Source of the DNA: Paramicrosporidium saccamoebae KSL3
Taxonomy: Eukaryota > Fungi > Cryptomycota
NCBI GenBank assembly: GCA_002794465.1
Contig: MTSL01000157.1
Coordinates: forward strand, 30,321-42,316
Length of the DNA stretch: 11,996 nucleotides
Direction: 5' to 3'
The notes under the pieces are model-generated. The model did not search any database, was not told the origin of the DNA, and was given only the letters and a program-made list of their open reading frames with translations. Of the stretch, positions 1 through 10,964 are shown in pieces; position 1 is the first letter of the stretch, and each line of letters starts with the position of its first letter. Made by a program: the position numbers and the translations under genes.

Positions 1-10
1 TGAGAAATTC

Positions 11-60
11 CCTTCTCGTCCCTTCTCGTCCCTTCTCGTCCCTTCTCGTCCTATCTCGTC
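11..60. repeat. 10-bp tandem repeat (CCTTCTCGTC)x4 plus one degenerate copy
   Basis: Perfect CCTTCTCGTC at 11, 21, 31 and 41; CTATCTCGTC at 51. Confidence 0.95.
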
Positions 61-138
61 TCTTTCCGCCTGACAAAGTCCGTGGTATTATCCCCACTAC
101 GCGACAACATGAATACTGAATACCCTCATATTTGCCCG

Positions 139-184
139 CCAATGATTGGTGGACAGTAATTGGACTGGCAGTTTTGATTGGACT
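139..184. promoter_or_regulatory. Cluster of four CCAAT/ATTGG boxes upstream of the kinase gene
   Basis: CCAAT 139-143; ATTGG 145-149; ATTGGACT at 159-166 and 177-184. All lie 65-110 bp upstream of ATG 250. Confidence 0.4.
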
Positions 185-249: not shown

Positions 250-3200
250 ATGGGTAACGCACAGACACGTCCATCTGCCAATACGGCGATAGACTATGAA
301 GAAGACCGAACAAAGAGTAATTAATCACTTATTACTGATTGGTAGTCGAGATCACCAACTTTTACGTTACAGAGGTGCCATTGCACGATGAGCCGCCCAA
401 CAGCTCGCAATCATCCTCGGGCGAGACGGGCCCGAGATTGCGCATGTTTAGCACCTTTCAGAGCGCCTCCCGTCCCAACATGTCCGCCGAAGGAGCACAC
501 AGCAGAGTGAAGCTGTCGGATTTGCTGGCCAGCGGAGTGCAGGTGCCGATGGAGCCGGGGGAATTCCAGTCCGAGTCATACTTTTTGAAACGACTTTCAC
601 ATTACGAATTCAAGGTGAAGGAGAATCTGACCAACATCCGAATACTCTTTTGCAAGAACCTTGAAGAGGGAGTGTATGGGGAGCAGTTGCTCGGACAACC
701 GCTATCGAATAACATTCTGATGAAGCCCAGTGCTCGGACATCGATTGTGGGGGATCGTCCTCCCAGTGACAGACTCTATGAACACGAGTTGGACATTTAC
801 ATCCCAGAGGATCAGAGCCGCTCCCGACGACTGTTTGTATTTATTGTGGCGGGTGACGATTCTCGATTGTTGGTCAAGGCACGCGCAGTGGTCATGACTC
901 CGACTGACAAGGCGCGTGTAGAATACATTGGCCAACATATGACGGAGCGTGACGAAAAGATGCACGCCATTCTTAAAAATGTCGCCTCGGAAGACAGCGT
1001 GATGACTGTCTTTAATGCAGAGGACCTCATTGAGGTGTTTTCCAAGACCAAAGCGGTGCCCAAACCGCCTTTTAAATATCTATTGGGCGCAAAGGACACG
1101 CTATTGGCCTATCGGATGTTCACTCCAGCCAATCGCGATTCCATCGTGGCGAATCTCATCTTTGTAGCCACCGATGTAACCTTTTTAGAGTATCTGGCGA
1201 GCTCCATTGCAACGGCGCACCCCATCAGGGTGATTTTGGTTGATCTGCGTGGATTTGGATATTCTGGAGGAAAACGTGGCCACACCCCGTCCATCAATCA
1301 GGTATACCGCGACATTAAGCAGATTATCAAGCACGTGCGGGGATTGTCGACAAAACCCATTGTGTTGGGCGGATATATGTTTGGTGGGGGGATGGTGATG
1401 AACTATTCCAGATTCAAAGATCGGATACCGGTGGATGCGTACATGCTATTGTCGCCTCTCCTTGGACGAGGATGGATTGGCTACTGGAAGGAGCAGCTAG
1501 CATCACTGGAGCAGGACAAGGTTATCAGCAGTCGTCTGGGCCATTTAAAATTGGCTAAGCTAACAGGTGGAAGGATTAGCGGTGGAAAGTACGTTTTTAA
1601 AACCAAAGTAGATGAGAACACGTACGACTTTAGTCCTCGCCATGTCAACAAGATGACGGCAAATTATGTCCTCTCCTTCCAAGTACCAAAAGACACCAAA
1701 GTATTTACTCAATTGGATGCGCCGATGGGAGTGTTTATGGCCGAGCGAGACGAGTTTATGGATACGGCCAAGGTGAGAAACGTCATCCAGCCGGGTTTGA
1801 CGGACCGGGACAGTAAATTTATCACCATTGAGGGGAAGACGGGTCTGCAGGTGTTACTGACGGCAACCAATGACATTGCTGAATGGATAACCAATTTGGA
1901 GGTGGTAAAGCCATGGAAGATTCGGGCCAAGGCGCCTCACAAGAGCCTCATTGATAAGAATGATATGGAGCTTATCAGTGATGTGGTGCCCAAGCCGATT
2001 TGGGACTCTATCACCAAGGGCATTGAGAAAAAGGTCTATGATCGCCAGCCGAGGCACACTGACTGTGATTCGTGTGCCATCTCTTACGATGTCTTTGAGC
2101 CAACATATCTTCCCGGTCGACCTATTGGAGTTCTCCTCTTTGTCGCTCCACGTTGTCAGGCGCACATCCTCCCCACACTGGCCGAGGTACATCGGGTCAT
2201 GGTCTTTCGTGTGGATCCATGGGAGCCGATGGGAAATAAGGCTAATGTCTCTCCAAAGGCCATTTGGCGATTCATGAGGAGTTCCATCCGATTGATAAAG
2301 TCAAATTTCCCGGGTTCGCCGTTCTACATTGGTGGAATTGGGTATGGTGCCTCAATAGTGCTGGGATATTCAAGACGAGAAGATCATCACCATGTGACGG
2401 GATACGTGTTGATTGATCCGCTGGCTGATCTGAAGAGTACCGCTAATAAGCAGTTTGCAAGAGAAAAGACTGACAAGACTGACAAGGCTGAAAGGACTGA
2501 TATTTCCACGCTGATCTATGGATTAGCAGGCCAGGAGGTGACTGACAAGAAACAGTTGACTATTCTCGATCGGACTGGTTATATTCCTCGGAGACTGCCC
2601 AATGCGGCAATGTTGGCCCTCAACAAGGATATTGTTGATGAGATTCGGTCGTTAGATGCTCCGGCCTTGGTGTTGCTTAGTCGAAACCATTCAATGATGG
2701 ACACTGTCAAGTTGCAGGCCTCACTAGCCGAGTTCCTCAAGCCTCCCTTTAAAGGGGTTGAAGTGAAGAACGGTGATCTCTACGGAGGGCTCGGCGAAAT
2801 GGCCACAAGCATCGGTCGCTGGGTTAATCAGCTGAGTACCTCAGTAGCGCCGCGGGTTCCCCTTCGTCTTTCTCGCCTCTCCATGGCCGACTTTGAGCCA
2901 ATTGAAATGATTGGAAAGGGTACCTTTGGGCGCGTTTGGCTTGTACGTCATATTGGCACCAGCCGCTTTTTGGCCCTGAAGGTGTTGGAGAAGGAGACTA
3001 TTATTAACAGCAAACAGACCCAACAGGTGGTCCGAGAGAAAGAGGTGCTCTCTGAATGCAACGATTGTCCTTTCATTGTCAGTTTTGTAGGCAGTTTTCA
3101 GGATCGCAAGCGACTGTATATTGTGATGGAGTTTGTGATCGGGGGAGAGCTCTTTACCCGACTGAACAGCATCAAAAAAATGTCAGTGGACGATGCGCGT

Positions 3201-3839
3201 TTCTACATGGCCGAGGTTGTGTCAGCCATCTCTTTTCTGCATCGCAAGGACATTATCTATCGCGACTTGAAGCCGGAAAACATTGTGTTGGACGCCCTTG
3301 GTCATGTGCGTTTGGTGGACTTTGGATTCGCCCGACATCTCAGCCGCGGTCGATGCACCAGTTTCTGCGGCTCACCCTTTTACATTGCCCCTGAAATGTT
3401 GTCCAATTCGAGTTATGGCATTTCGGTGGACATTTGGGCACTGGGAGTGTTGCTCTTTGAGCTTTTGATAGGGAATCCACCCTTTTCAGGCAGCACGGCC
3501 AACGAAGTTTATCGACGGATCTTATTCTCCAATGTCGAAGTCCCAACTAGCCTGGACTCGGACTCTCGTGATCTTCTCTATGCACTTCTTGATCCATCGC
3601 CCGATAGTCGCATCGGAAGTAAGAATGGACTTGATGATGTGATGAAGCACAGATGGTTTAAGGGGATTGATTGGGACAGAGTACGTGCCAAGGAAACACA
3701 AGCGCCTTATCAACCACACTTTACCTTTGAAGGAGACACGGGCAATTTTATGAAGGTTGGCGGGGCCACTTTTGACGATTTTGAAGAAGAGGCCTACGAT
3801 GGACGGAATGATGGGCTCTTTGCCGGATTCGCCACTTGA
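250..3839 (+). CDS. N-myristoylated AGC (PKA-catalytic-like) Ser/Thr kinase fused to two degenerate alpha/beta-hydrolase domains; exons 250-316 and 346-3839; ~1186 aa
   Basis: The ORF track start at 339 is a TTG right after a stop. Removing GT-AG intron 317-345 joins MGNAQTRPSANTAIDYEEDRTK in frame to IEITNF. Kinase region 2892-3659 has GKGTFG, LALK, YRDLKPEN, DFG, APE and the C-tail FDDFEEE...FAGF. Hydrolase-like regions are ~1101-1890 (DLRGFGYSGGKRG) and ~2079-2835. Confidence 0.88.
317..345 (+). other. 29-nt spliceosomal intron
   Basis: GTAATT...TACTGAT...GGTAG. Phase 1; contains the in-frame TGA at 336; removal restores the frame from ATG 250. Confidence 0.85.
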
Positions 3840-3895: not shown

Positions 3896-4037
3896 GAATC
3901 TGGATTATTTGGCGCTTTTATAGGCTGCCATCTGGGTCGGATCTATCAAGCATGGGTGGATACTGTTTGACAGGGTCGTTGTGCTAACTAAAACCCACAC
4001 AGGGATTGCTGTATAAATAAAGGCAAAACAAATTTGA

Positions 4038-4624
4038 TTAGAAGGTTATACTCATGTTTCTTATGGAATCGGATCGTACCATGGCAGAGGAGAATTCGTC
4101 AAAATCTATTAGGCTGTCGCGGTTCAAATCGGCATCTCTGAATGTCTGTTCCACAATTGCCACCAGTTCGTCCTCTTCCAGGTTGTGTCCGGCCATCAGC
4201 CTGAGCACTTCCAGGAGCTCTTCCTTGGTAATGAATCCATTGCCCGACAGATTGTACACTCGAAATGCGACTAAAATCAGTGACACGACTCGCTGTACAT
4301 TGCAGCTTTTCCAGGTTGTTGGCCTTGCTGTGGAACACGGACATTAGCTGGGCAAACGTGGTAAAGTCGACTTCTTCCTCGTCAAAATTCAACAGCTCTA
4401 TTATCCGCGGTGTCAGCGGGTTCATGGCAAATTCTGGAATGCCAAGTATCTCTTCTACGCTGAGAGTGCCGCTGCGGTCGCGGTCAAGCCTCTCGAAGCG
4501 TCTATACAGTTCCTCAAGCTCTGCCAACGAAACTACAATTGAGATTGACACGGGACATACAATAAGTGCATTGCTGCAGCTGGGCAATGTCCTCGGAGGC
4601 CAACGATGAACTTGCTGTTCCCAT
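4038..4624 (-). CDS. Calcineurin B-like / CHP-like myristoylated EF-hand Ca2+-binding protein; exons 4624-4561, 4532-4299, 4270-4038; 176 aa
   Basis: Spliced product: MGTASSSLASEDIAQLQQCTYFSLAELEELYRRFERLDRDRSGTLSVEE...IPEFAMNPLTPRII...KLQFAFRVYNLSGNGFITKEELLEVLRLMAG...DADLNRDSLIDFDEF...MSITF. EF-hand loops and the NPL and KLxFAF motifs match the CNB/CHP family. Confidence 0.92.
4271..4298 (-). other. 28-nt intron
   Basis: GTACAG...CACTGATTTTAG. Removal gives the conserved KLQFAFRVY. Confidence 0.92.
4533..4560 (-). other. 28-nt intron
   Basis: GTATGT...TTGTAG. Removal joins the MGTASS exon to FSLAEL in frame. Confidence 0.9.
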
Positions 4625-4976
4625 GTAAGCCAACAATATCAGAAATATCCGAAATGTTATAAATGCTTTGTTATTGACCGCCAATCACGATTGTTTCATG
4701 GTATAATACTCTTGAATTGCCGATCCGCCACTATTGCTACTGCAGCCGCCTCGATACTAAGTGACAATTGTATCCCACAAGGAAAATAAATATTGCAGAT
4801 ATAAAACAGACGGGCCGCGCCGGGGGTTTAGATTCTATCGCCAAAGACTGAATTACGGCCACTGCATCTATCCACTGCAGTGTTCTTGTCTCCTTTGGCA
4901 GAATAAAAACTCTCTGGGCGCCCTTTGTGAACTTGTGAGCATTGGGAATCAGGCTGTTTACATATAAAGCTACAGC

Positions 4977-5451
4977 ATGCTAAAAAAGTCAATTATGTGC
5001 ATTTGTGAGGCCAGAAAGGTCAAGCTTTTGTGGCTCGCCGGAACAGATGCGGTGGTGCATTCAGAGTATATGGATCTTTTACAGACGGAGTGGGACAATG
5101 TCCTGTTGTGGACAAGGTGCTCAGAGGCTTGCGTGCTACTAAGACTCACTGACGGCCCAGCTATAGTCTGTCTGCTGGCAAGGCTCCTGTCAAATCATCA
5201 TGCGCCCGAGTCGGTAATGTCGTGGGTTCTTGCAAAAAGCCCACAACCACCCCTAGAGCAGGTTTGAATTTATATACAAGGCTCTAACCGAGTAGGCTGC
5301 AACTCTGCTGCATGGCCTGAACTTGGAGGCCCAAAAAGTCAACGAGTTGGAAGAGACATTTTTGGATCAATATCCGTCATTCAAGGCCCCCTTTAGTGCC
5401 GCCCAAAAGGCGACTACTGAGCTTGTCAATCTGCACAAGCCGTTTAGATGA
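4977..5451 (+). CDS. Probable small hypothetical protein; exons 4977-5261 and 5296-5451 (~146 aa); 5' end uncertain
   Basis: The 96-aa ORF ends inside an intron-like segment (GTTTGA...CTAAC...TAG). Splicing continues in frame for 51 aa (AATLLHGLNLEAQKVNELEETFLDQYPSFKAPFSAAQKATTELVNLHKPFR*). No recognisable family. Confidence 0.55.
5262..5295 (+). other. 34-nt intron
   Basis: GT donor at a codon boundary, canonical CTAAC branch point at 5284-5288, TAG acceptor. Confidence 0.65.
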
Positions 5452-5572
5452 TGATTTATTCACAATTCCAGCTGTTTCATAATATTAAAGACTTGTTCAT
5501 CTGCACAGACTGTTTAGATGATAATTTATTCATAATTCCAGCTGTTGCATAATATTAGAGACTTGTTCATCT
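5431..5572. repeat. 70-bp tandem duplication (two copies, 63/70 identical)
   Basis: 5431-5500 versus 5501-5570 differ at 7 positions by my count. Imperfect CTTGT(C/T)(A/C)ATCT microhomology at 5422, 5492 and 5562. Confidence 0.95.
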
Positions 5573-7752
5573 TTACCCGACGGTTCACACTCATCCTGGG
5601 CTGCGCTGCAGTTGGGGTCATTTTCCTCAACCTCACTGTCAGTCTCTATGGGTATATGGTGATCCATGGAGCGGGGAGTGTCGAAATCAACAACTTGGCG
5701 CAGTCGGGAGACTGGCGTAGAAGGCATTGTCTTGGGCCGGAGGGAAATTCCCAATTCTGCGTCAAGGATGATCTCATCATCATGAAACACTCTAGGCGAG
5801 GGAATGATTTCGCCCTCTTCAGTGACATTTGAATCGGGCGAAGGAAAGAGGAACTCTTCTCCAGTGACATTTGAATTGGGCGAGGGAAAGAGTCCCACCC
5901 CTCCAGTGGCATTTGCATTGGGCGAGGGAAACAGCCCCGTCCCTCCAGCGGCATTGGAAGAGGGATGGAATCCCTCCCCTCCAGCGGCATTGGAAGAGGG
6001 ATGGAATCCCTCCCCTCTAGTGACACCCTTCATCGGGCTACCCAACAATAACTCATGGTCGGGATGTAGCTTTCTGGGACTCTGCAGGGTCACAATCGTA
6101 TTGACTTGGACATCATCTTCAAGTATGCGCTCTTCAAGCATGCGTTCCTCAATGATGCGCTCTTCGATGGCCTTGGTCACATTTGGATACTGGCTCTTTC
6201 CTTTGCAGCTTGTCAGGACCTGAATGCGTTTTCCGGGTGCAGACCATTCAATAATATCGTCCACCAGTCTATGGGCATCTTCAATCAGAGATGGTTTGGC
6301 CTTGAATTGTATATTGGTAGCAACGTAGAATAGCCGATGGATAATCTTTTCAGTCTTTAGGGCCACCTCTGGAACCTTTTCGGCAGGGATCAGCTTTAGC
6401 AATTTCTTTCCAAATTCGACGACCATAAAGACAACTTTGTAGTGGACGTCGCCAAGCCCACCAAAGAATATCTCAAAGAGTCGCCCGGTTGTCGGCCGAT
6501 GTGACAGCATAAACTCGACAATATCGGGTCGTTCCATAATTTCTAAGAAATCTACAAGGGACTTGTAGCGCACATTCCACTCTACACGCTTCACCCCCTC
6601 GAAAAAGTCATAAAGTAGCGACTTTGGAGTAGGGGGTAAAATGTGACTGTCCATGGAGACGGTTCGCTTTGGTGACGTGATTGCTGATGAGGACCCAGAC
6701 CGAGGAAGCATCACCTTGGCAAGACTGGGAAGCTGATGGGCAGAGGCTGATGAGACAATTCGGTGGGGCTTGTGCACATTATCCAAAGTAGGAGGAGCGG
6801 ACAGGGTTGATTTTATGGCTCTAGTGGGTAATTTGGTACTTTCCACGCGAACAGACTTTTTCAGACTGCTCGGCTCTGAGGGATACGGATGGAACGGGGC
6901 TACTTTTGCTGCAACGCGTTGAGGCCCATGAGGCTTTACTGGATCAGCACTCGCCTCCTTCTTGGTGGAGATGAATGCACGGAACGATAGGGTTGGCTTG
7001 GATGCATTGGATTGTCCAGCATCCAGGCTTTTGCTAATTGTAGAGGGCAGATTCGACATGATCCTAGTCAGTTAATAATAAAAGTTGCGAGACTACTGAA
7101 GAGCATGGTTGGGGAAGACGAGCCTGAAATCGGCAAATACTGTGCGACTAGCAACCCTCACCGGCTCGGCAGCATCTTGCAGTCCATTTCTGATTACAAG
7201 TGAGATAATGTCGACATGCTCAATTGTCGCATCTTTTTTTGAGTGCTTCAGGACAGCTCCGATGGCCTCGATGATGCAGTGGCGGAGATTTTTGTTGGCA
7301 CTGCTCGCAGATTCGCCCAGACGGGGCACAACGTATTTCGTCGGACCTGGACATGCGCTTAGCACCTCCAACAGCAGGCATTTTGCTCGCTCAAATAGGA
7401 TTTTACTGGTGCGCTCACATAGCTTTAAGATTTGGCCCAGGAAGTACTCTTGCAAATGTTCATATTCTGTCCCAACCGATCGAACAACTGCAGCAATGGT
7501 AGCCATCGATGTCAATGCCAAGCGCGTCCGCTCGGTGGTCATCTAGGAATTTATGCATAAGAGACTCTTGGGTACGACATCCTGCAAAACTTGTCTAAAT
7601 CGTCTGATGGAGAGCATGGCATTGTCAACATTTGACTTTGGCAGTTCACTGATGTACTCTTTGAACAGCGTATCAATTTTCTCCCAATTGTGCTCCGTCT
7701 CCTTTCCATCATAAATGGTGAGAATCTTGGTGGCGATAGAGTTCAAGCTCAT
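5530..7752 (-). CDS. STU1: CLASP/STU1 microtubule-associated HEAT/TOG-like protein; exons 7752-7576, 7542-7097, 7063-5530; ~718 aa
   Basis: The N-terminal GKETEHNWEK...ERTRLA...LLKLC-type...GLQDAAEPVRVASR pattern matches CLASP_N. It is followed by an S/P/K-rich linker, a second HEAT region (WNVRYKSL...RLFEIFFGGLGDVHYKV) and a low-complexity tail. Two 33-nt introns join three track ORFs in frame. Confidence 0.85.
5794..6025 (-). repeat. In-frame coding minisatellite (42-nt and 36-nt units) in the CLASP tail
   Basis: 42-nt units at 5822, 5864 and 5906; a perfect 36-nt duplicate at 5941-5976 and 5977-6012. Encodes GEGFHPSSNAAG x2 and G(T/V)GLFPSPN-type repeats. Confidence 0.93.
7064..7096 (-). 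other. 33-nt intron
   Basis: GTAGTC...TAACTGACTAG. Phase 2; gives NHALQIMSNLP. Confidence 0.85.
7543..7575 (-). other. 33-nt intron
   Basis: GTACCC...TTCCTAG. Phase 0; gives VLQDVMTTERT. Confidence 0.8.
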
Positions 7753-7800
7753 GCAATGCGCGCCAATGGGAAAAGGCAAATTCACTTTGGCTTTAACTCG

Positions 7801-8674
7801 ATGCGTCCGGCAACCCACAGCGGAAGCTGGTACTCTGCAAATCGTATAGTCTGGCCCTAATCCTAACCAGCTAGCCGAGGATTTGCAATCCCAGATACGG
7901 CGGTGGCTTGATACGGCGACTGTAGAGGCATGCAACGCAAAGGTCGTGATCGTTCCTCATGCAGGCTATAAATATTCGGCATTTACCGCTGCCCATAGCT
8001 ACAAGGCATTGGCGCAGAGTAAGCAGTGGAGACGGGTTATCGTTCTCGGTCCCTCCCATCGCGCCATATTGCCTTCAGCATGTGTAAAGTGTCCATTTGA
8101 CGTAATTGCAACTCCGTTGGGCCCTATGCATGTTGGCACCCTGTCTGGTCCGATGCATACCGGGTCCCCCTCGATTGATCAAAATGAGCACTCTTTGGAG
8201 ATGCAGTTTCCATTCATAAAGTTTTGCTTCCCCAATGCACATGTCATTCCAATCCTTGTTGGTGATCTGGGGCACGATAGAGAAAAGTATGCCCACATTC
8301 TGGCTGAGGAATTGCTGGACAAAGATACGGCACTGGTAATTAGCAGCGATTTCTGCCACTGGGGAAACAATTATTCATATGCGCCTTCCCTTGGAGCCTC
8401 GGGAACGATGAGCGGGAGAATCCAAGCACTGGACATGAAGGGGATGGATAGCATTTTCACGGGCGATTTCCGGCTGTTCGGCAAATATTTGCAACAAACC
8501 CGAAATACAATCTGTGGTAGGAATCCGATCATGTTGGGACTGCAGATTATTGAACAAGCACAAATAAAGGGCGAATGGAAGCTGCAACACTACAGCCAAA
8601 GTGCACATATCCAATCATACGATCCAAACCAATACTCTGTGAGTTATCTATCGGCAGCCTTTTGTGTATCGTAG
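7801..8674 (+). CDS. MEMO1: MEMO1/MHO1 family protein (AmmeMemoRadiSam protein B-like, dioxygenase-like fold); exons 7801-7843 and 7875-8674; 280 aa
   Basis: MRPATHSGSWY (exon 1), PHAGYKYS, GPSH, EHSLEMQ, SSDFCHWG, NTICGRNPI and SVSY match MEMO-family motifs. Confidence 0.95.
7844..7874 (+). other. 31-nt intron
   Basis: GTATAG...CCTAAC CAG CTAG. Only the distal TAG restores the frame (SANPEDLQ). Confidence 0.88.
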
Positions 8675-8841: not shown

Positions 8842-10072
8842 TCATAAATATGCAGTCTGGTTAGGATTGTTGCAAGTAAGGACCCTATATATGCGTTTTG
8901 ATAGAGATGGTCCCAATGTTCTATTTCCGCCCAATGGGATGTCGGCGAGGAGCATTTCGCCCTGCATTTGGTCCGATTCATTGTATCGGCGCAGCAGACT
9001 ATCCATGGTTGGGAATGAGGCTGCAATTGCCGTAGCTACAGTTGGAGTGACTCTGCCTATCTCTTCGAGAATCCGCCTCCACGTGCCACTTAGTGTAGTG
9101 CCACAGCGTTTTGAGGCCACGACACAAAAATTGCCAGTTTCATGGCGATGACCATATGGTTCCCAGGCCACACACTTGGTCATTTCGAGAAGATGGTCTG
9201 GTAACTGGTCGACATGGTCCAAAAACTGTATGCGTACTCCATTTTCGAGACCAGCGAGCCATAGGGCTTGTTCCAGCTCATCCCAGGTTGGAAGCTTTTT
9301 TGTGGGCGTCAGCACTAGTCGTGTGCCAGTAAGGACAGCGCGTCGGAACTCTTTGTTAATTTCCGAAGCTAGTCTTGACGACAGAGCCTTTCCACCAATG
9401 ATGAGAAAATATACTTGATCATATGTAGAGGGTATGAGACGTTGGTGCCTTGACAGAAATTCCAATACCGCCTCTTCCCCACCAGATTTTATATGGGCAT
9501 GGATGTCTTGAGAATCAAAAATGAGTGCAACAAATCGTGTCGAATCTAAAGGCGTTTGGCATTGTGAGCGGGCGCTATTAGACCTACTGGCGCTGGTACT
9601 ATTGGAGAGTTGGCGATTCCACAGTATTGCATTTTCAGCAAATAGTCGAACTGAGGCCGTTTCAACTGTCGACTGTAGCTTTGTAAACGCAGACATGTAT
9701 CGAAGGAAGAGACGATCGTCGACAAGGGCGCAAATCTCATTGATCGCCTCTGCCTTGACGCGCGGGGGACGTCCTAGGCGGACTCGCTTAGGGGGGCTGG
9801 CTTTCAAGGGTTCATCGTGACTTAACATGGACCCGCTCCGCTCAAGGCGGGGAGTGTCTCGGTCAGAGGACAAGACAATGACATTTTTACTAGCTGGGAG
9901 TTTGCGCTCCACTGGGCTGTTATAGCTGAGCCATTTTTTGCGAAACGAATTAAACAACGGAGTTGTGACGCCACCATTCCCTGCAGTGGGCGGGGAAGAT
10001 GAGACCAAATCAATGACTTTAACTTTTCCTGAAAATCAACCAAATAGCCCATTGCGTACCAGCTGTGTGCAT
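8842..10072 (-). CDS. EME1: EME1/MMS4 non-catalytic subunit of the MUS81 structure-specific endonuclease; exons 10072-10060 and 10028-8842; 399 aa
   Basis: N-terminal VIDLVSSSP; an ERCC4-like region ([17 protein letters not shown]...[11 protein letters not shown]); a C-terminal HhH region ([25 protein letters not shown]...LLADI...[12 protein letters not shown]). The track start is a TTG; the ATG comes from a 13-nt first exon. Confidence 0.85.
10029..10059 (-). other. 31-nt intron
   Basis: GTACGC...TTGATTTTCAG. Phase 1; gives [12 protein letters not shown]. Confidence 0.78.
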
Positions 10073-10190
10073 CCTGTCCGCCGCGAGGTACAATTGGCCG
10101 ACCGGGGTAGGGAAGTCGTCGCTAGAGATCGGCCTGTATCAGGTAGGCCCCTATCCATCCGTCCCCTTTAACTGGCATTTAGATAGACTA

Positions 10191-10964
10191 ATGGGTCGTG
10201 TTATCCGCACTCAGCGCAAAGGTCACGGAGGAATCTTCAAGGCCCACACCAAGCATCGTCAAGGTGCCGCCGCTTTCCGTCGTCTCGACTTTGCCGAACG
10301 CGAGGGATATATCCGCGGTGTCGTCCGTGAAATCGTGCATGATCCTGGCCGTGGTGCTCCACTTGCCAAGGTCGAGTTCCGCGACCCGTACCGCTACCGC
10401 AAGGTTGTTGAGACTTTTGTCGCCATCGAGGGCATGTACACTGGCCAGTTTGTCTACTGTGGCAAGAAGGCCACCCTGAGCGTTGGAAACATTCTCCCTC
10501 TGCAGTCTATGCCCGAGGGTACCATTGTCTGCAACGTTGAGGAGAAGGCTGGTGATGGTGGTTCCGTGGCCCGCTGCTCTGGAAACTACGCCACCGTCAT
10601 TGGACACAATGTCGATGATGGCACCACCCGTATTAAGATGCCCTCTGGCTCCAAGAAGCTCGTCTCTGGCCGCTGCCGCGCCATGATTGGACTTGTTGCT
10701 GGTGGTGGTCGTATTGACAAGCCTCTCCTGAAGGCTGGTCGTGCCTACTACAAGTACAAGGCCAAGCGCAACTGCTGGCCCAAGGTTCGTGGTGTTGCCA
10801 TGAATCCCGTTGACCATCCTCACGGAGGTGGTAACCACCAGCACGTTGGTCACGCCACCACCGTGTCTCGCTTCGCGCCGCCTGGCCAGAAGGTTGGTCT
10901 TATTGCTGCTCGTCGCACTGGTCTCCTCCGCGGAACAAAGAAGGTGCGTGAGACTACTGATTAA
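10191..10964 (+). CDS. RPL2: 60S ribosomal protein uL2 (fungal RPL2 / animal RPL8), 257 aa, no intron in the CDS
   Basis: [11 protein letters not shown]...[11 protein letters not shown]...[19 protein letters not shown]...[13 protein letters not shown], with strong C/T-ending codon bias. Confidence 0.99.

What the first reader, a model, noticed from the sequence alone, without database searches (positions are those of the whole stretch)
250..3839. Myristoylated double pseudo-hydrolase / PKA-like kinase fusion: a possible lipid-sensing kinase
Seen: one stop-free frame carries a Gly2 myristoylation signal, an unassigned N-terminal region, two alpha/beta-hydrolase-like folds lacking the nucleophile, and an AGC kinase with all core catalytic motifs. 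Established: PKA catalytic subunits are normally ~350-500 aa with no such folded extensions, and inactivated or repurposed hydrolase folds act as small-molecule receptors (GID1 for gibberellin). I do not recognise this architecture. Inference: a membrane-anchored kinase whose dead lipase pockets bind a lipid or host metabolite and gate activity in cis, replacing the cAMP/R-subunit switch.
Basis: partly seen in the sequence, partly recalled or inferred. Interest (0 to 1): 0.85.

Follow-up and report, generated by a model that had tools for sequence, protein, structure and literature searches.

The report
Myristoylated PKA-like kinase with dead lipase domains
This is a real two-exon gene for a 1186-residue PKA-like protein kinase that carries a lipid-anchor signal, a small beta-sandwich and two catalytically dead lipase-like domains; the family is uncharacterised but conserved in several unicellular relatives of fungi and animals.

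Summary
The Met-Gly start at 250 is not in the frame of the long ORF. A 29-nt intron (317-345) joins the two frames. Six related loci and an annotated NCBI homologue support this splice.

The 1186-aa product contains, in order:
- an N-myristoylation consensus, MGNAQT;
- a disordered linker with a conserved RxRxFSTF motif;
- an Ig-like beta-sandwich with no Pfam match;
- two homologous monoglyceride-lipase-type alpha/beta-hydrolase domains (hhalign E 4e-13), both lacking the oxyanion HGGG motif, the nucleophile Ser and the catalytic His;
- a complete AGC kinase, 43% identical to PKA C-alpha, ending in FxxF.

The dead hydrolase domains evolve as slowly as the kinase (dN/dS about 0.08-0.19), so they are functional.

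The architecture is not unique. About 25 cluster representatives carry it, from rozellid-like metagenome organisms, aphelids (Paraphelidium, Amoeboaphelidium) and ichthyosporeans (Chromosphaera, Amoebidium). Public sources label them hypothetical or "PKA". I found no paper describing the fusion.

Lipid sensing that gates the kinase is plausible but untested. My verdict is a new variant of a known kind, of moderate interest.

The parts
250..316 (+). Exon 1. Encodes MGNAQTRPSANTAIDYEEDRTK plus the first base of the junction Ile codon. Carries the N-myristoylation consensus (Gly2, Thr6, Arg7).
   Evidence: Sequence. The same mini-exon is conserved in L001, L003 (two genes), L004 and L005 and in the annotated or transcript-derived relatives P0130-P0139, P0156, P0159 and P0172.
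317..345 (+). 29-nt phase-1 intron, GTAATT...GGTAG.
   Evidence: Removing it joins frame 1 to the ORF frame and creates ATC (Ile). Homologues have GTAA..AG introns of roughly 40-70 nt at the same codon position. The neighbouring gene has two 28-nt introns.
346..3839 (+). Exon 2. Supplies the rest of the 1186-aa protein. The stop codon is 3837-3839.
   Evidence: ORF list and translation.
435..470 (+). Conserved basophilic motif RLRMFSTFQSAS (Arg at -5 and -3 of Ser35) in a linker predicted to be disordered. It is a candidate autophosphorylation or pseudosubstrate site (inference).
   Evidence: F34, S35, T36 and A40 are nearly invariant in alignment A1. pLDDT is below 50 for aa 12-50. P0130 has RRPRMFSTF.
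498..1052 (+). N-terminal domain: a beta-sandwich of about eight strands (aa 53-182) followed by a long helix (185-214) and short helices to about aa 235. No Pfam family matches it.
   Evidence: AF2 models (pLDDT 74-88 over aa 51-185). Foldseek finds only weak matches, led by RhoGDI (E 5e-4, TM 0.52), then Der p 2, PDE-delta and MD-2, mixed with generic Ig-like domains. Pfam finds nothing. dN/dS is 0.035-0.19.
1053..1937 (+). Pseudo-hydrolase domain 1, an alpha/beta-hydrolase of the Hydrolase_4 / monoglyceride-lipase type. Met344 sits at the nucleophile position (nt 1377-1379). The oxyanion HGGG motif is lost, His is replaced by Gly499, and the acid residue Asp468 is retained.
   Evidence: Pfam Hydrolase_4 E 7e-18. 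Best Foldseek matches are Mtb and human monoglyceride lipases at E about 1e-9. Triad table against active bacterial relatives. dN/dS is 0.09-0.11.
2082..2852 (+). Pseudo-hydrolase domain 2, an ancient internal duplicate of domain 1. Gly665 sits at the nucleophile position (nt 2340-2342), and the acid and His are also lost. A short conserved linker (SVAPR) connects it to the kinase.
   Evidence: hhalign of domain 1 against domain 2 gives probability 97.9%, E 3.9e-13 over 211 columns. The model has canonical beta-alpha-beta topology. Triad table. dN/dS is 0.075-0.19.
2895..3659 (+). AGC protein kinase core, PKA-like. Key residues are Gly-loop GKGTFG, Lys878, Glu897, YRD973LKPEN, D991FG, activation-loop Ser1005 and APE1016.
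   Evidence: Pfam Pkinase E 4e-68. The best PDB match is PKA C-alpha at 268 bits, against Akt 243 and PKG 242. Identity is 43% over 289 aligned positions. Invariant columns and coordinates.
3660..3836 (+). AGC C-terminal tail. Contains FEGDTGNF, an FDDF motif, and a terminal hydrophobic motif F1158-A-G-F1161 two residues from the C-terminus, as in PKA's FTEF-COOH.
   Evidence: Alignments A1 and with PKA. Most relatives end in FxxF or FxxY.

Best explanation
Window 250-3839 is one two-exon gene of an uncultured early-diverging relative of fungi. It encodes a 1186-aa AGC kinase closest to the PKA catalytic subunit.

Shown:
- The kinase has every catalytic motif. It also has a conserved activation-loop Ser, the acidic residues that read Arg at P-3/P-2 (equivalents of PKA E127, E170 and E230), and a PKA-style C-terminal FxxF.
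- The N-terminus carries a family-wide MG...[S/T] myristoylation consensus.
- Between the N-terminus and the kinase lie an Ig-like beta-sandwich and two tandem-duplicated monoglyceride-lipase-type alpha/beta-hydrolase domains.
- In this protein both hydrolase domains have lost the oxyanion motif, the Ser nucleophile and the His. They nevertheless evolve under purifying selection as strong as on the kinase.

Inferred:
- The protein is an active, basophilic, membrane-tethered kinase.
- The dead lipase tandem is a non-catalytic regulatory or targeting module that controls the kinase in cis through the short conserved linker.
- The most likely modes are binding a hydrophobic ligand or membrane lipid in the retained capped pocket, and/or holding the kinase in an autoinhibited state. 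The conserved RxRxFS motif in the N-terminal linker would serve as an intramolecular (pseudo)substrate.

The gene belongs to an old, patchily retained opisthokont family found in rozellid-like organisms, aphelids and ichthyosporeans. Its hydrolase module descends from active stand-alone enzymes of about 300 aa. The closest such enzymes found here are bacterial.

My step probabilities:
- single gene, spliced as described: 0.95;
- both hydrolase domains non-catalytic: 0.9;
- kinase active: 0.85;
- N-myristoylated in vivo: 0.75;
- N-terminal module regulates or targets the kinase in cis: 0.6;
- regulation occurs specifically through a lipid or small-molecule ligand: 0.25.
For: Gene model.

Domains:
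- Pfam and PDB sequence search.
- AF2 plus Foldseek; monoglyceride lipases are the best matches, E about 1e-9, TM to target up to 0.67.
- Internal duplication, hhalign E 3.9e-13.

Loss of catalysis:
- All 8 bacterial relatives examined and the kinase-less Capsaspora protein keep GHSxG, Asp and His. Seven of the 8 bacterial ones also keep an HGGG-type motif, which Capsaspora lacks.
- No kinase-fused domain 1 has Ser, and the window has Met and Gly at the two Ser positions.

Constraint: per-domain dN/dS is 0.035-0.19 in two orthologous pairs, with the hydrolase domains close to the kinase.

One polypeptide:
- The long relatives scanned (about 25) all carry the hydrolase region plus Pkinase.
- They include Trinity transcripts from Paraphelidium and Amoebidium that span both parts.

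The cap region is kept at the same length as in the active enzymes and shares motifs such as L[ST]GGR and [MI]T.N.

Organism and synteny.
Against: - No experiment and no ligand evidence exists. Nothing here shows the pockets are open or occupied.
- Both AF2 models rest on only 10 sequences and are of moderate confidence (mean pLDDT 71 and 64, pTM about 0.5).
- The relative arrangement of the domains is unknown, and I had no full-length model with hydrolase-kinase contacts.
- The cap is no better conserved than the C-terminal core, so its retention is weak evidence for a pocket.
- Two distant relatives (P0132 and P0138, domain 2) keep Ser, Asp and His. Catalysis may therefore persist in part of the family, and loss of activity need not reflect one shared function.
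- Position 6 of the most divergent close homologue (MGAALE, L004) fits the myristoylation consensus poorly.
Confidence: 0.6

Rival explanations
1. Ligand-gated kinase. One or both dead lipase pockets bind a specific lipid or host metabolite (monoacylglycerol, lysolipid or fatty acid), and occupancy switches the kinase on or off, independently of cAMP and R subunits.
For: - The fold is closest to monoglyceride lipases.
- The cap is kept at full length with motifs shared with active enzymes.
- Purifying selection acts on both domains.
- A short conserved linker leads to the kinase.
- Trp196 of PKA, which docks R subunits, is not conserved here.
- Hydrolase folds repurposed as receptors are an established precedent (GID1, D14/KAI2).
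Against: - There is no direct evidence for a pocket or a ligand.
- The cap is the lowest-confidence part of the model (pLDDT below 50 for aa 385-438 and 708-729).
- Whether these organisms also have R subunits and a canonical PKA could not be checked.
- Pseudo-hydrolases such as neuroligins and NDRG proteins work through protein contacts, not ligands.
Confidence: 0.25
2. Scaffold or autoinhibition without a small-molecule ligand. The beta-sandwich and the two dead hydrolase domains are protein-protein or intramolecular docking surfaces. They position substrates, dimerise the kinase or clamp it. Release would come through phosphorylation, for example at the RxRxFS motif or the activation-loop Ser.
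For: - A conserved basophilic motif lies in a disordered linker.
- The kinase retains the acidic residues that read Arg at P-3/P-2.
- All three non-kinase modules are strongly constrained.
- The two hydrolase domains may form a pseudo-dimer, since they are duplicates.
Against: - The RxRxFS motif is limited to the window's clade and P0130. It is absent from the aphelid and ichthyosporean members.
- No partner protein is known.
- The inter-domain geometry is unresolved (pTM 0.48).
Confidence: 0.35
3. Myristoyl switch. The N-terminal beta-sandwich is a RhoGDI/PDE-delta/UNC119-like lipid-binding sandwich that sequesters the protein's own myristoyl group. The protein would then cycle between cytosol and membrane.
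For: - The only Foldseek match below E 1e-3 is RhoGDI. RhoGDI2, Der p 2, PDE-delta and MD-2 are also among the top 50.
- The myristoylated Gly lies only about 25 residues before the first conserved strand.
- Gly2 and the sandwich co-occur across most of the family.
Against: - The matches are weak (TM about 0.5, E 5e-4 at best) and are mixed with generic Ig-like domains of glycosidases, transglutaminases and integrins.
- There is no sequence-level similarity.
- Model confidence is only moderate.
Confidence: 0.12
4. Gene-model artefact. Two adjacent genes, a hydrolase and a kinase, are read through as one, or the MG exon is unrelated upstream sequence.
For: The ATG at 250 is out of frame with the ORF. 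No transcript data exist for this organism.
Against: - The reading frame is uninterrupted for 1163 codons, with a conserved linker.
- The same fusion occurs in about 25 diverged relatives, including single assembled transcripts.
- The MG exon and the intron phase are conserved in the five homologous genes examined on four loci and in an NCBI gene model.
Confidence: 0.03

Closest known systems
cAMP-dependent protein kinase catalytic subunit (PKA-C, AGC group)
   Same: - It is the best match in the PDB: 268 bits, 43% identity over PKA residues 40-329.
- All catalytic motifs are identical or conservative.
- The equivalents of E127, E170 and E230 are kept.
- The tail has FDDF and a terminal FxxF.
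- The N-terminal MGN... myristoylation signal resembles that of mammalian C-alpha (established knowledge).
   Different: - About 850 residues of folded domains are inserted between the myristoylated N-terminus and the kinase core, in place of PKA's A-helix.
- Trp196 is replaced (Thr here, variable across the family) and Glu203 becomes Phe.
- The activation-loop Thr197 is Ser.
- The tail has an 8-residue insertion.
- The score margin over Akt and PKG is small (268 against 243 and 242 bits), so orthology with PKA is not established.
- cAMP and R-subunit control is unknown.
Monoglyceride lipase / Hydrolase_4 (Pfam PF12146) alpha/beta-hydrolases, including ~300-aa bacterial stand-alone enzymes such as the Candidatus Tenebribacter burtonii MAG hydrolase
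   Same: - The fold is shared (Foldseek E about 1e-9 to Mtb Rv0183 and human MGLL).
- The D-x-R-G-x-G-x-S-x-G-x-R-G motif after strand 4, the G..G..LNY helix after the elbow, and the cap length and cap motifs are all shared.
- The family profile matches the bacterial enzymes at E 1e-30 to 1e-37.
   Different: - The oxyanion HGGG motif, the Ser nucleophile and the His are all missing in both copies.
- The domain is duplicated in tandem.
- It is fused to a kinase.
Alpha/beta-hydrolase-fold receptors and pseudoenzymes (GID1, D14/KAI2, neuroligins, NDRG)
   Same: A hydrolase fold is kept for a non-hydrolytic role under purifying selection. These are precedents for both the ligand-sensor and the adhesion/scaffold readings (established knowledge).
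   Different: There is no detectable sequence relationship beyond the superfamily. None of these proteins is covalently fused to a kinase. GID1 and D14 keep the Ser, whereas this protein does not.
Kinases controlled in cis by lipid-related modules (Akt PH domain, PKC C1/C2 domains, the c-Abl myristoyl switch)
   Same: They share the logic of a lipid anchor or lipid-binding module N-terminal to, and regulating, a kinase domain (AGC for Akt and PKC). This is analogy only.
   Different: The folds are unrelated: a dead lipase tandem and an Ig-like sandwich here, against PH, C1 or SH3-SH2. Regulation in this protein is inferred, not shown.
RhoGDI / PDE-delta / UNC119 and ML-domain lipid-binding beta-sandwiches
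   Same: They are the best, though weak, structural matches of the N-terminal sandwich.
   Different: TM is about 0.5 and sequence identity 12-13%. They are not separable from generic Ig-like domains, and Pfam gives no hit. Membership is not established.

Membership tests
Eukaryotic protein kinase, AGC group | Complete catalytic core: Gly-rich loop, VAIK Lys, alpha-C Glu, HRD-type catalytic loop, DFG and APE. | tested here: met
   GKGTFG, K878, E897, YRD973LKPEN, D991FG and APE1016 are invariant across 10 sequences. Pfam Pkinase E 4e-68.
Eukaryotic protein kinase, AGC group | AGC C-terminal tail with an NFD/FDDY-type motif and a hydrophobic motif FxxF. | tested here: met
   GDTGNF...FDDF and a terminal F1158-A-G-F1161. 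FxxF or FxxY is at the C-terminus of most relatives.
PKA catalytic subunit (as an orthologue) | Closest to PKA rather than to other AGC kinases. | tested here: inconclusive
   PKA C-alpha scores 268 bits, Akt 243 and PKG 242. No phylogeny with canonical PKA from the same lineages was possible.
PKA catalytic subunit (as an orthologue) | Surface that docks R subunits and PKI (Trp196, Glu203, and the substrate-Arg readers E127, E170, E230). | tested here: inconclusive
   The equivalents of E127, E170 and E230 are kept. Trp196 is Thr (variable across the family) and Glu203 is Phe. The docking residues are therefore not met and the Arg readers are met.
PKA catalytic subunit (as an orthologue) | Inhibition by a cAMP-binding regulatory subunit. 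| not testable with these tools
   No genome of this organism is available to search for R subunits, and no biochemistry exists.
Hydrolase_4 / monoglyceride-lipase-type alpha/beta-hydrolases | Alpha/beta-hydrolase fold with a cap inserted after strand 6. | tested here: met
   Pfam PF12146 E 7e-18. AF2 topology and Foldseek matches to MGLs. Domain 2 is assigned through hhalign to domain 1. It was not searched by fold on its own.
Hydrolase_4 / monoglyceride-lipase-type alpha/beta-hydrolases | Catalytic triad Ser (in GxSxG), Asp and His, plus the oxyanion-hole motif. | tested here: not met
   Domain 1 has Met344, Asp468 and Gly499, with no HGGG motif. Domain 2 has Gly665, His and Leu at the three positions, with no HGGG motif. 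The bacterial relatives and the kinase-less Capsaspora protein keep the triad. These are pseudoenzyme derivatives, not enzymes of the family.
N-myristoylated proteins | Met-Gly start with a small or uncharged residue at position 3 and Ser/Thr (or Ala, Cys) at position 6. | tested here: met
   The window has MGNAQTR. All twelve full-length relatives that start MG and all five homologous genes examined (plus the window) keep Gly2, and most have S/T at position 6. L004 (MGAALE) fits poorly.
N-myristoylated proteins | Covalent myristate on Gly2 in vivo. | not testable with these tools
   This needs metabolic labelling or mass spectrometry.
RhoGDI / PDE-delta / UNC119-like lipid-binding sandwiches | Ig-like beta-sandwich with a hydrophobic lipid-binding cavity, and detectable homology. 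| tested here: inconclusive
   The best Foldseek hit is RhoGDI at E 5e-4 and TM 0.52, mixed with generic Ig-like domains. Pfam gives no hit. The cavity could not be examined.

The most novel reading that the evidence does not exclude
This would be an ancestral opisthokont class of cAMP-independent, lipid-gated PKA-like kinases. The myristoylated N-terminus and a RhoGDI-like sandwich would act as a membrane switch. One or both dead monoglyceride-lipase pockets would sense a monoacylglycerol or lysolipid, or in the parasitic lineages a host lipid, and release the kinase. The class would survive in ichthyosporeans, aphelids and rozellid/early microsporidian-like parasites and would have been lost from animals and higher fungi.
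Probability: 0.15. Interest if true: 0.8.

Novelty: new variant of a known kind. Interest (0 to 1): 0.55.

Why it matters
AGC kinases are usually switched by second messengers acting through separate subunits or through small lipid-binding domains. A conserved family in which a PKA-like core is welded to two dead lipase folds and a lipid anchor would be a new regulatory design. It would also be a natural example of pseudoenzyme domains taken over for signalling.

The family's distribution spans both the fungal and the animal side of the opisthokont tree, and the named members are all unicellular, several of them parasites. This makes it relevant to how kinase regulation diversified before animals and fungi. 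It may also bear on how intracellular parasites such as rozellids and aphelids read host lipids.

Several relatives come from culturable organisms (Amoeboaphelidium, Chromosphaera, Amoebidium), so the idea can be tested.

If the module is only a scaffold, the finding is still a useful annotation for about 25 clusters of proteins now labelled "hypothetical" or plain "PKA".

Tried and rejected
- **Reading 250-3839 as one frame.** It contains many stops, so I replaced it with the spliced model.
- **PDB sequence profile search with the N-terminal 835 aa.** Only marginal hydrolase hits came back (E at best 0.009). They served only to confirm the register of the nucleophile.
- **Pfam on the N-terminal domain of seven family members at E up to 10.** Nothing was found.
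- **Rfam on the whole window.** Nothing was found.
- **Four literature searches.** The terms covered hydrolase plus PKA plus Rozella or microsporidia, Hydrolase_4 plus Pkinase, pseudoenzyme plus AGC kinase, and aphelid kinome. None returned a paper describing this fusion. One earlier query failed on syntax.
- **dN/dS for the tandem paralogues.** Synonymous sites are saturated, so only the orthologous pairs were used. The window-versus-L001 comparison was never computed, because the script stopped at that pair with a division error.
- **Blastocystis as the source organism.** I considered it because of the ~30-nt intron and rejected it. RPL8 places the organism near Mitosporidium, Amoeboaphelidium and Rozella.
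- **Residual catalysis through the Thr at the nucleophile position in P0001, P0002 and P0004.** I rejected it because those domains also lack His and the oxyanion motif.
- I did not build a full-length model with inter-domain confidence, and I did not run a separate fold search of domain 2.


Full report
**1. What is in the sequence**

The window has a 1166-codon ORF at 339..3839 on the + strand. It encodes MGNAQTRPSANTAIDYEEDRTKSN and then stops. The claim of "one stop-free frame" is therefore wrong as written.

A 29-nt GT..AG intron (317-345) joins the two frames in phase 1. The junction codon is A|TC, which encodes Ile. The spliced protein has 1186 residues and begins MGNAQTRPSANTAIDYEEDRTK-I-EITNFYVTEVP.

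I tested this splice against relatives. The five homologous genes whose upstream DNA I read lie on four loci: L001, L003 (two genes), L004 and L005. Each has the same mini-exon (MGN[ATS]QT[RK]PS.NTAI[DE]Y.E.D, or MGAAVTK / MGAALEK in the two most distant), a GTA..AG intron at the same codon phase, and the same junction Ile.

An NCBI gene model, P0130, reads MGNTLTRPSENAAIDYDEDQSKIEVLNFSL. The neighbouring EF-hand gene in the window has two 28-nt introns of the same style, so such tiny introns are normal for this genome.

**2. Organism and context**

The ribosomal protein L8 encoded at about 10.1-10.96 kb is 80% identical to that of Mitosporidium daphniae. It is 76-78% identical to those of Amoeboaphelidium, Rozella and Paraphelidium. 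Many unnamed metagenome proteins reach 87-95%. The source is therefore an uncultured early-diverging member of the fungal side of the opisthokonts, either rozellid-like or early-microsporidian-like.

The other genes in the window are an EF-hand protein, a CLASP-like protein, Memo, EME1/MUS81 and RPL8. The order TIMELESS, kinase, EF-hand, CLASP, Memo, EME1, RPL8 is conserved in the related contigs L001, L003 and L006. The kinase gene is tandemly duplicated in L003 and L006.

**3. Domain anatomy**

Residue numbers are counted from nt 348. Add 23 for the full-length protein.

- *Pfam.* Pkinase matches 850-1104 (E 4e-68) and Hydrolase_4 matches 290-481 (E 7e-18). Only a weak Abhydrolase_3 signal appears at 653-718.
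- *AF2 model of residues 1-835.* It used 10 sequences and reached mean pLDDT 71 and pTM 0.48. It shows a disordered stretch (12-50), a beta-sandwich of about eight strands (53-182) followed by a long helix (185-212), and two canonical alpha/beta-hydrolase folds (243-530 and 579-833).
- *Fold search.* Foldseek against the PDB returns 802 matches at E 0.001 or better. They are led by Mycobacterium tuberculosis Rv0183 and human monoglyceride lipase (E about 1e-9, TM to target 0.55-0.67).
- *Internal duplication.* A profile-profile comparison of the two hydrolase regions gives 97.9% probability and E 3.9e-13 over 211 columns, with the two nucleophile elbows aligned. The second fold is therefore an ancient duplicate of the first.
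- *N-terminal sandwich.* It has no Pfam match in seven family members. A second AF2 model of residues 1-251 has pLDDT 74-88 across the sandwich. It finds only weak fold matches. RhoGDI is best (E 5e-4, TM 0.52). RhoGDI2, Der p 2, PDE-delta and MD-2 follow, interleaved with generic Ig-like domains of glycosidases, transglutaminases and integrins. I call it an Ig-like sandwich. The resemblance to lipid-binding sandwiches is a lead, not a result.

**4. Are the hydrolase domains dead?**

I searched 1.84 billion representative proteins with a profile of the N-terminal 835 residues. The closest stand-alone relatives are bacterial proteins of about 300 aa (E 1e-30 to 1e-37). One cluster is named an alpha/beta-fold hydrolase of a Candidatus Tenebribacter burtonii MAG.

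I aligned all hydrolase domains together.

- All eight bacterial relatives keep GHSxG, the Asp and the His, and seven of them keep an HGGG-type oxyanion motif. The kinase-less Capsaspora proteins keep the triad but not the HGGG motif.
- No kinase-fused domain 1 has Ser at the elbow. The residues found there are M, T, V, F, A, H, L, Y, G, E or N.
- In the window, domain 1 has Met344, retains the acid Asp468, and has Gly499 in place of His.
- In the window, domain 2 has Gly665 and lacks both the acid and the His.
- Both window domains lack the HGGG motif.
- The exceptions are in distant relatives only. P0132 domain 2 has GHSFG plus Asp plus His, and P0138 domain 2 has Ser, Asp and His.
- Aphelid and some ichthyosporean copies keep His but not Ser.

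The domains are nevertheless constrained. In two orthologous gene pairs (L003 against L006), Nei-Gojobori dN/dS values are as follows:

| Region | Pair a | Pair b |
|---|---|---|
| Beta-sandwich | 0.035 | 0.19 |
| Hydrolase 1 | 0.093 | 0.11 |
| Hydrolase 2 | 0.075 | 0.19 |
| Kinase | 0.058 | 0.10 |

The cap between strands 6 and 7 keeps the length of the cap in the active enzymes and shares motifs with them. It is no better conserved than the C-terminal core.

**5. The kinase**

The best solved relative is PKA C-alpha, at 268 bits and 43% identity over PKA residues 40-329. Akt scores 243 and PKG 242.

All catalytic motifs are present and invariant in the family. The activation-loop phosphosite is an invariant Ser. 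The acidic residues that read substrate Arg (equivalents of PKA E127, E170 and E230) are kept, which predicts a basophilic kinase. The tail has FDDF, and FAGF lies two residues from the C-terminus, as with PKA's FTEF.

Two residues differ from PKA. Trp196, which docks the R subunit, is Thr here and variable across the family. Glu203 is Phe.

A nearly invariant R-x-R-x-F-S-T-F motif lies in the disordered linker of the window's clade and in P0130. It fits a basophilic AGC consensus. I propose it as a candidate intramolecular substrate or pseudosubstrate. This is inference.

**6. Distribution**

The first homology search, with the N-terminal 841 residues, found nine relatives at 31-52% identity. 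All are 1104-1180 aa and all carry both Hydrolase_4 and Pkinase.

The exhaustive profile search added longer-range members of 800-1443 aa. Every one I scanned has Pkinase, and nearly all have Hydrolase_4. Named members are listed below.

- Paraphelidium tribonemae, a transcript annotated as a putative cAMP-dependent protein kinase catalytic subunit.
- Amoeboaphelidium protococcarum, KAI3649756.1 and paralogues, annotated as hypothetical.
- Chromosphaera perkinsii, two proteins.
- Amoebidium parasiticum, a transcript.

Capsaspora and Pigoraptor have related hydrolase proteins without a kinase. The Capsaspora copies keep an intact triad.

Every relative whose sequence begins at the true N-terminus starts MG, with S, T, A or C at position 6.

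The fusion is thus old and spans both Holomycota and Holozoa. It is patchily retained and is already present in public data under uninformative names. Four literature searches found no description of it.

**7. Mechanism**

*Shown.* This is one gene encoding one polypeptide. The myristoylation consensus is conserved. The sandwich and the two dead MGL-type domains are under purifying selection. The kinase is complete and PKA-like.

*Inferred.* The protein is a membrane-tethered, active, basophilic kinase. Its N-terminal module regulates or targets it in cis.

I rank three mechanisms:
- scaffold or autoinhibition without a small ligand, about 0.35;
- a myristoyl switch through the sandwich, about 0.12.

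These are not mutually exclusive. A gene-model artefact is essentially excluded.

**8. Limits**

- Both structure models rest on a 10-sequence alignment and are of moderate confidence.
- I could not obtain a full-length model or inter-domain confidence.
- Domain 2 was not searched by fold on its own.
- No transcript data exist for the source organism.
- I could not check whether it also has a canonical PKA and R subunit.

**9. Verdict**

The architecture is not unique to this window. It appears to be an uncharacterised, conserved variant of an AGC kinase. Interest is moderate at 0.55. Novelty is a new variant of a known kind.

Noticed in passing
window about 3900-4650, minus strand: The neighbouring gene encodes an EF-hand protein that looks like calcineurin B or CHP. 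It also starts Met-Gly (MGTASSS) and has two 28-nt GTA..TAG introns. It sits next to the kinase gene, on the opposite strand, in all related contigs (L001, L003, L006).
   Followed up: partly
L003 10001-17326; L006 6164-13489: In two related genomes the hydrolase-kinase gene is tandemly duplicated, with paralogues about 50-55% identical and synonymous sites saturated. The window and L001 show one copy next to the EF-hand gene. Only 249 nt lie upstream in the window, so a second copy further upstream cannot be excluded.
   Followed up: partly
window 135-155; L003 about 9720 and 13540; L004 about 195 and 250; L005 about 325-385: A TGATTGG motif (an inverted CCAAT box) recurs about 100-200 nt upstream of the start codon of this gene in the window and in every homologous locus examined.
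   Followed up: no
window 9-64: A 10-bp tandem repeat, TCCCTTCTCG, occurs 5.6 times at the very start of the window, upstream of the gene.
   Followed up: no
window 5530-7935, minus strand: Three consecutive minus-strand ORFs of 130, 149 (CLASP_N) and 509 aa probably form one CLASP-like gene split by short introns. The homologous gene is a single product of about 685 aa in L003 and L006. The 509-aa part contains in-frame 36/42-nt tandem repeats (GEGFHPSSNAAG-like units) at 5795-6017.
   Followed up: partly
window 5422-5572: A 70-bp tandem repeat (2.2 copies, 88% identical) overlaps the 3' end of the 509-aa ORF and the sequence downstream of it.
   Followed up: no
P0132 and P0138 (distant relatives, not in the window): Domain 2 of these two kinase-fused relatives keeps Ser, Asp and His (GHSFG in P0132). 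Hydrolase activity may therefore survive in part of the family. Aphelid copies keep His but not Ser.
   Followed up: partly
window 7883-8674 (+), 8842-10008 (-), 10065-10964 (+): Memo-like, EME1/MUS81-C and ribosomal protein L8 genes are packed with intergenic gaps of 50-170 nt, which indicates a very compact genome. The L8 ORF listed from a GTG start extends upstream of the conserved MGRVIR start.
   Followed up: no
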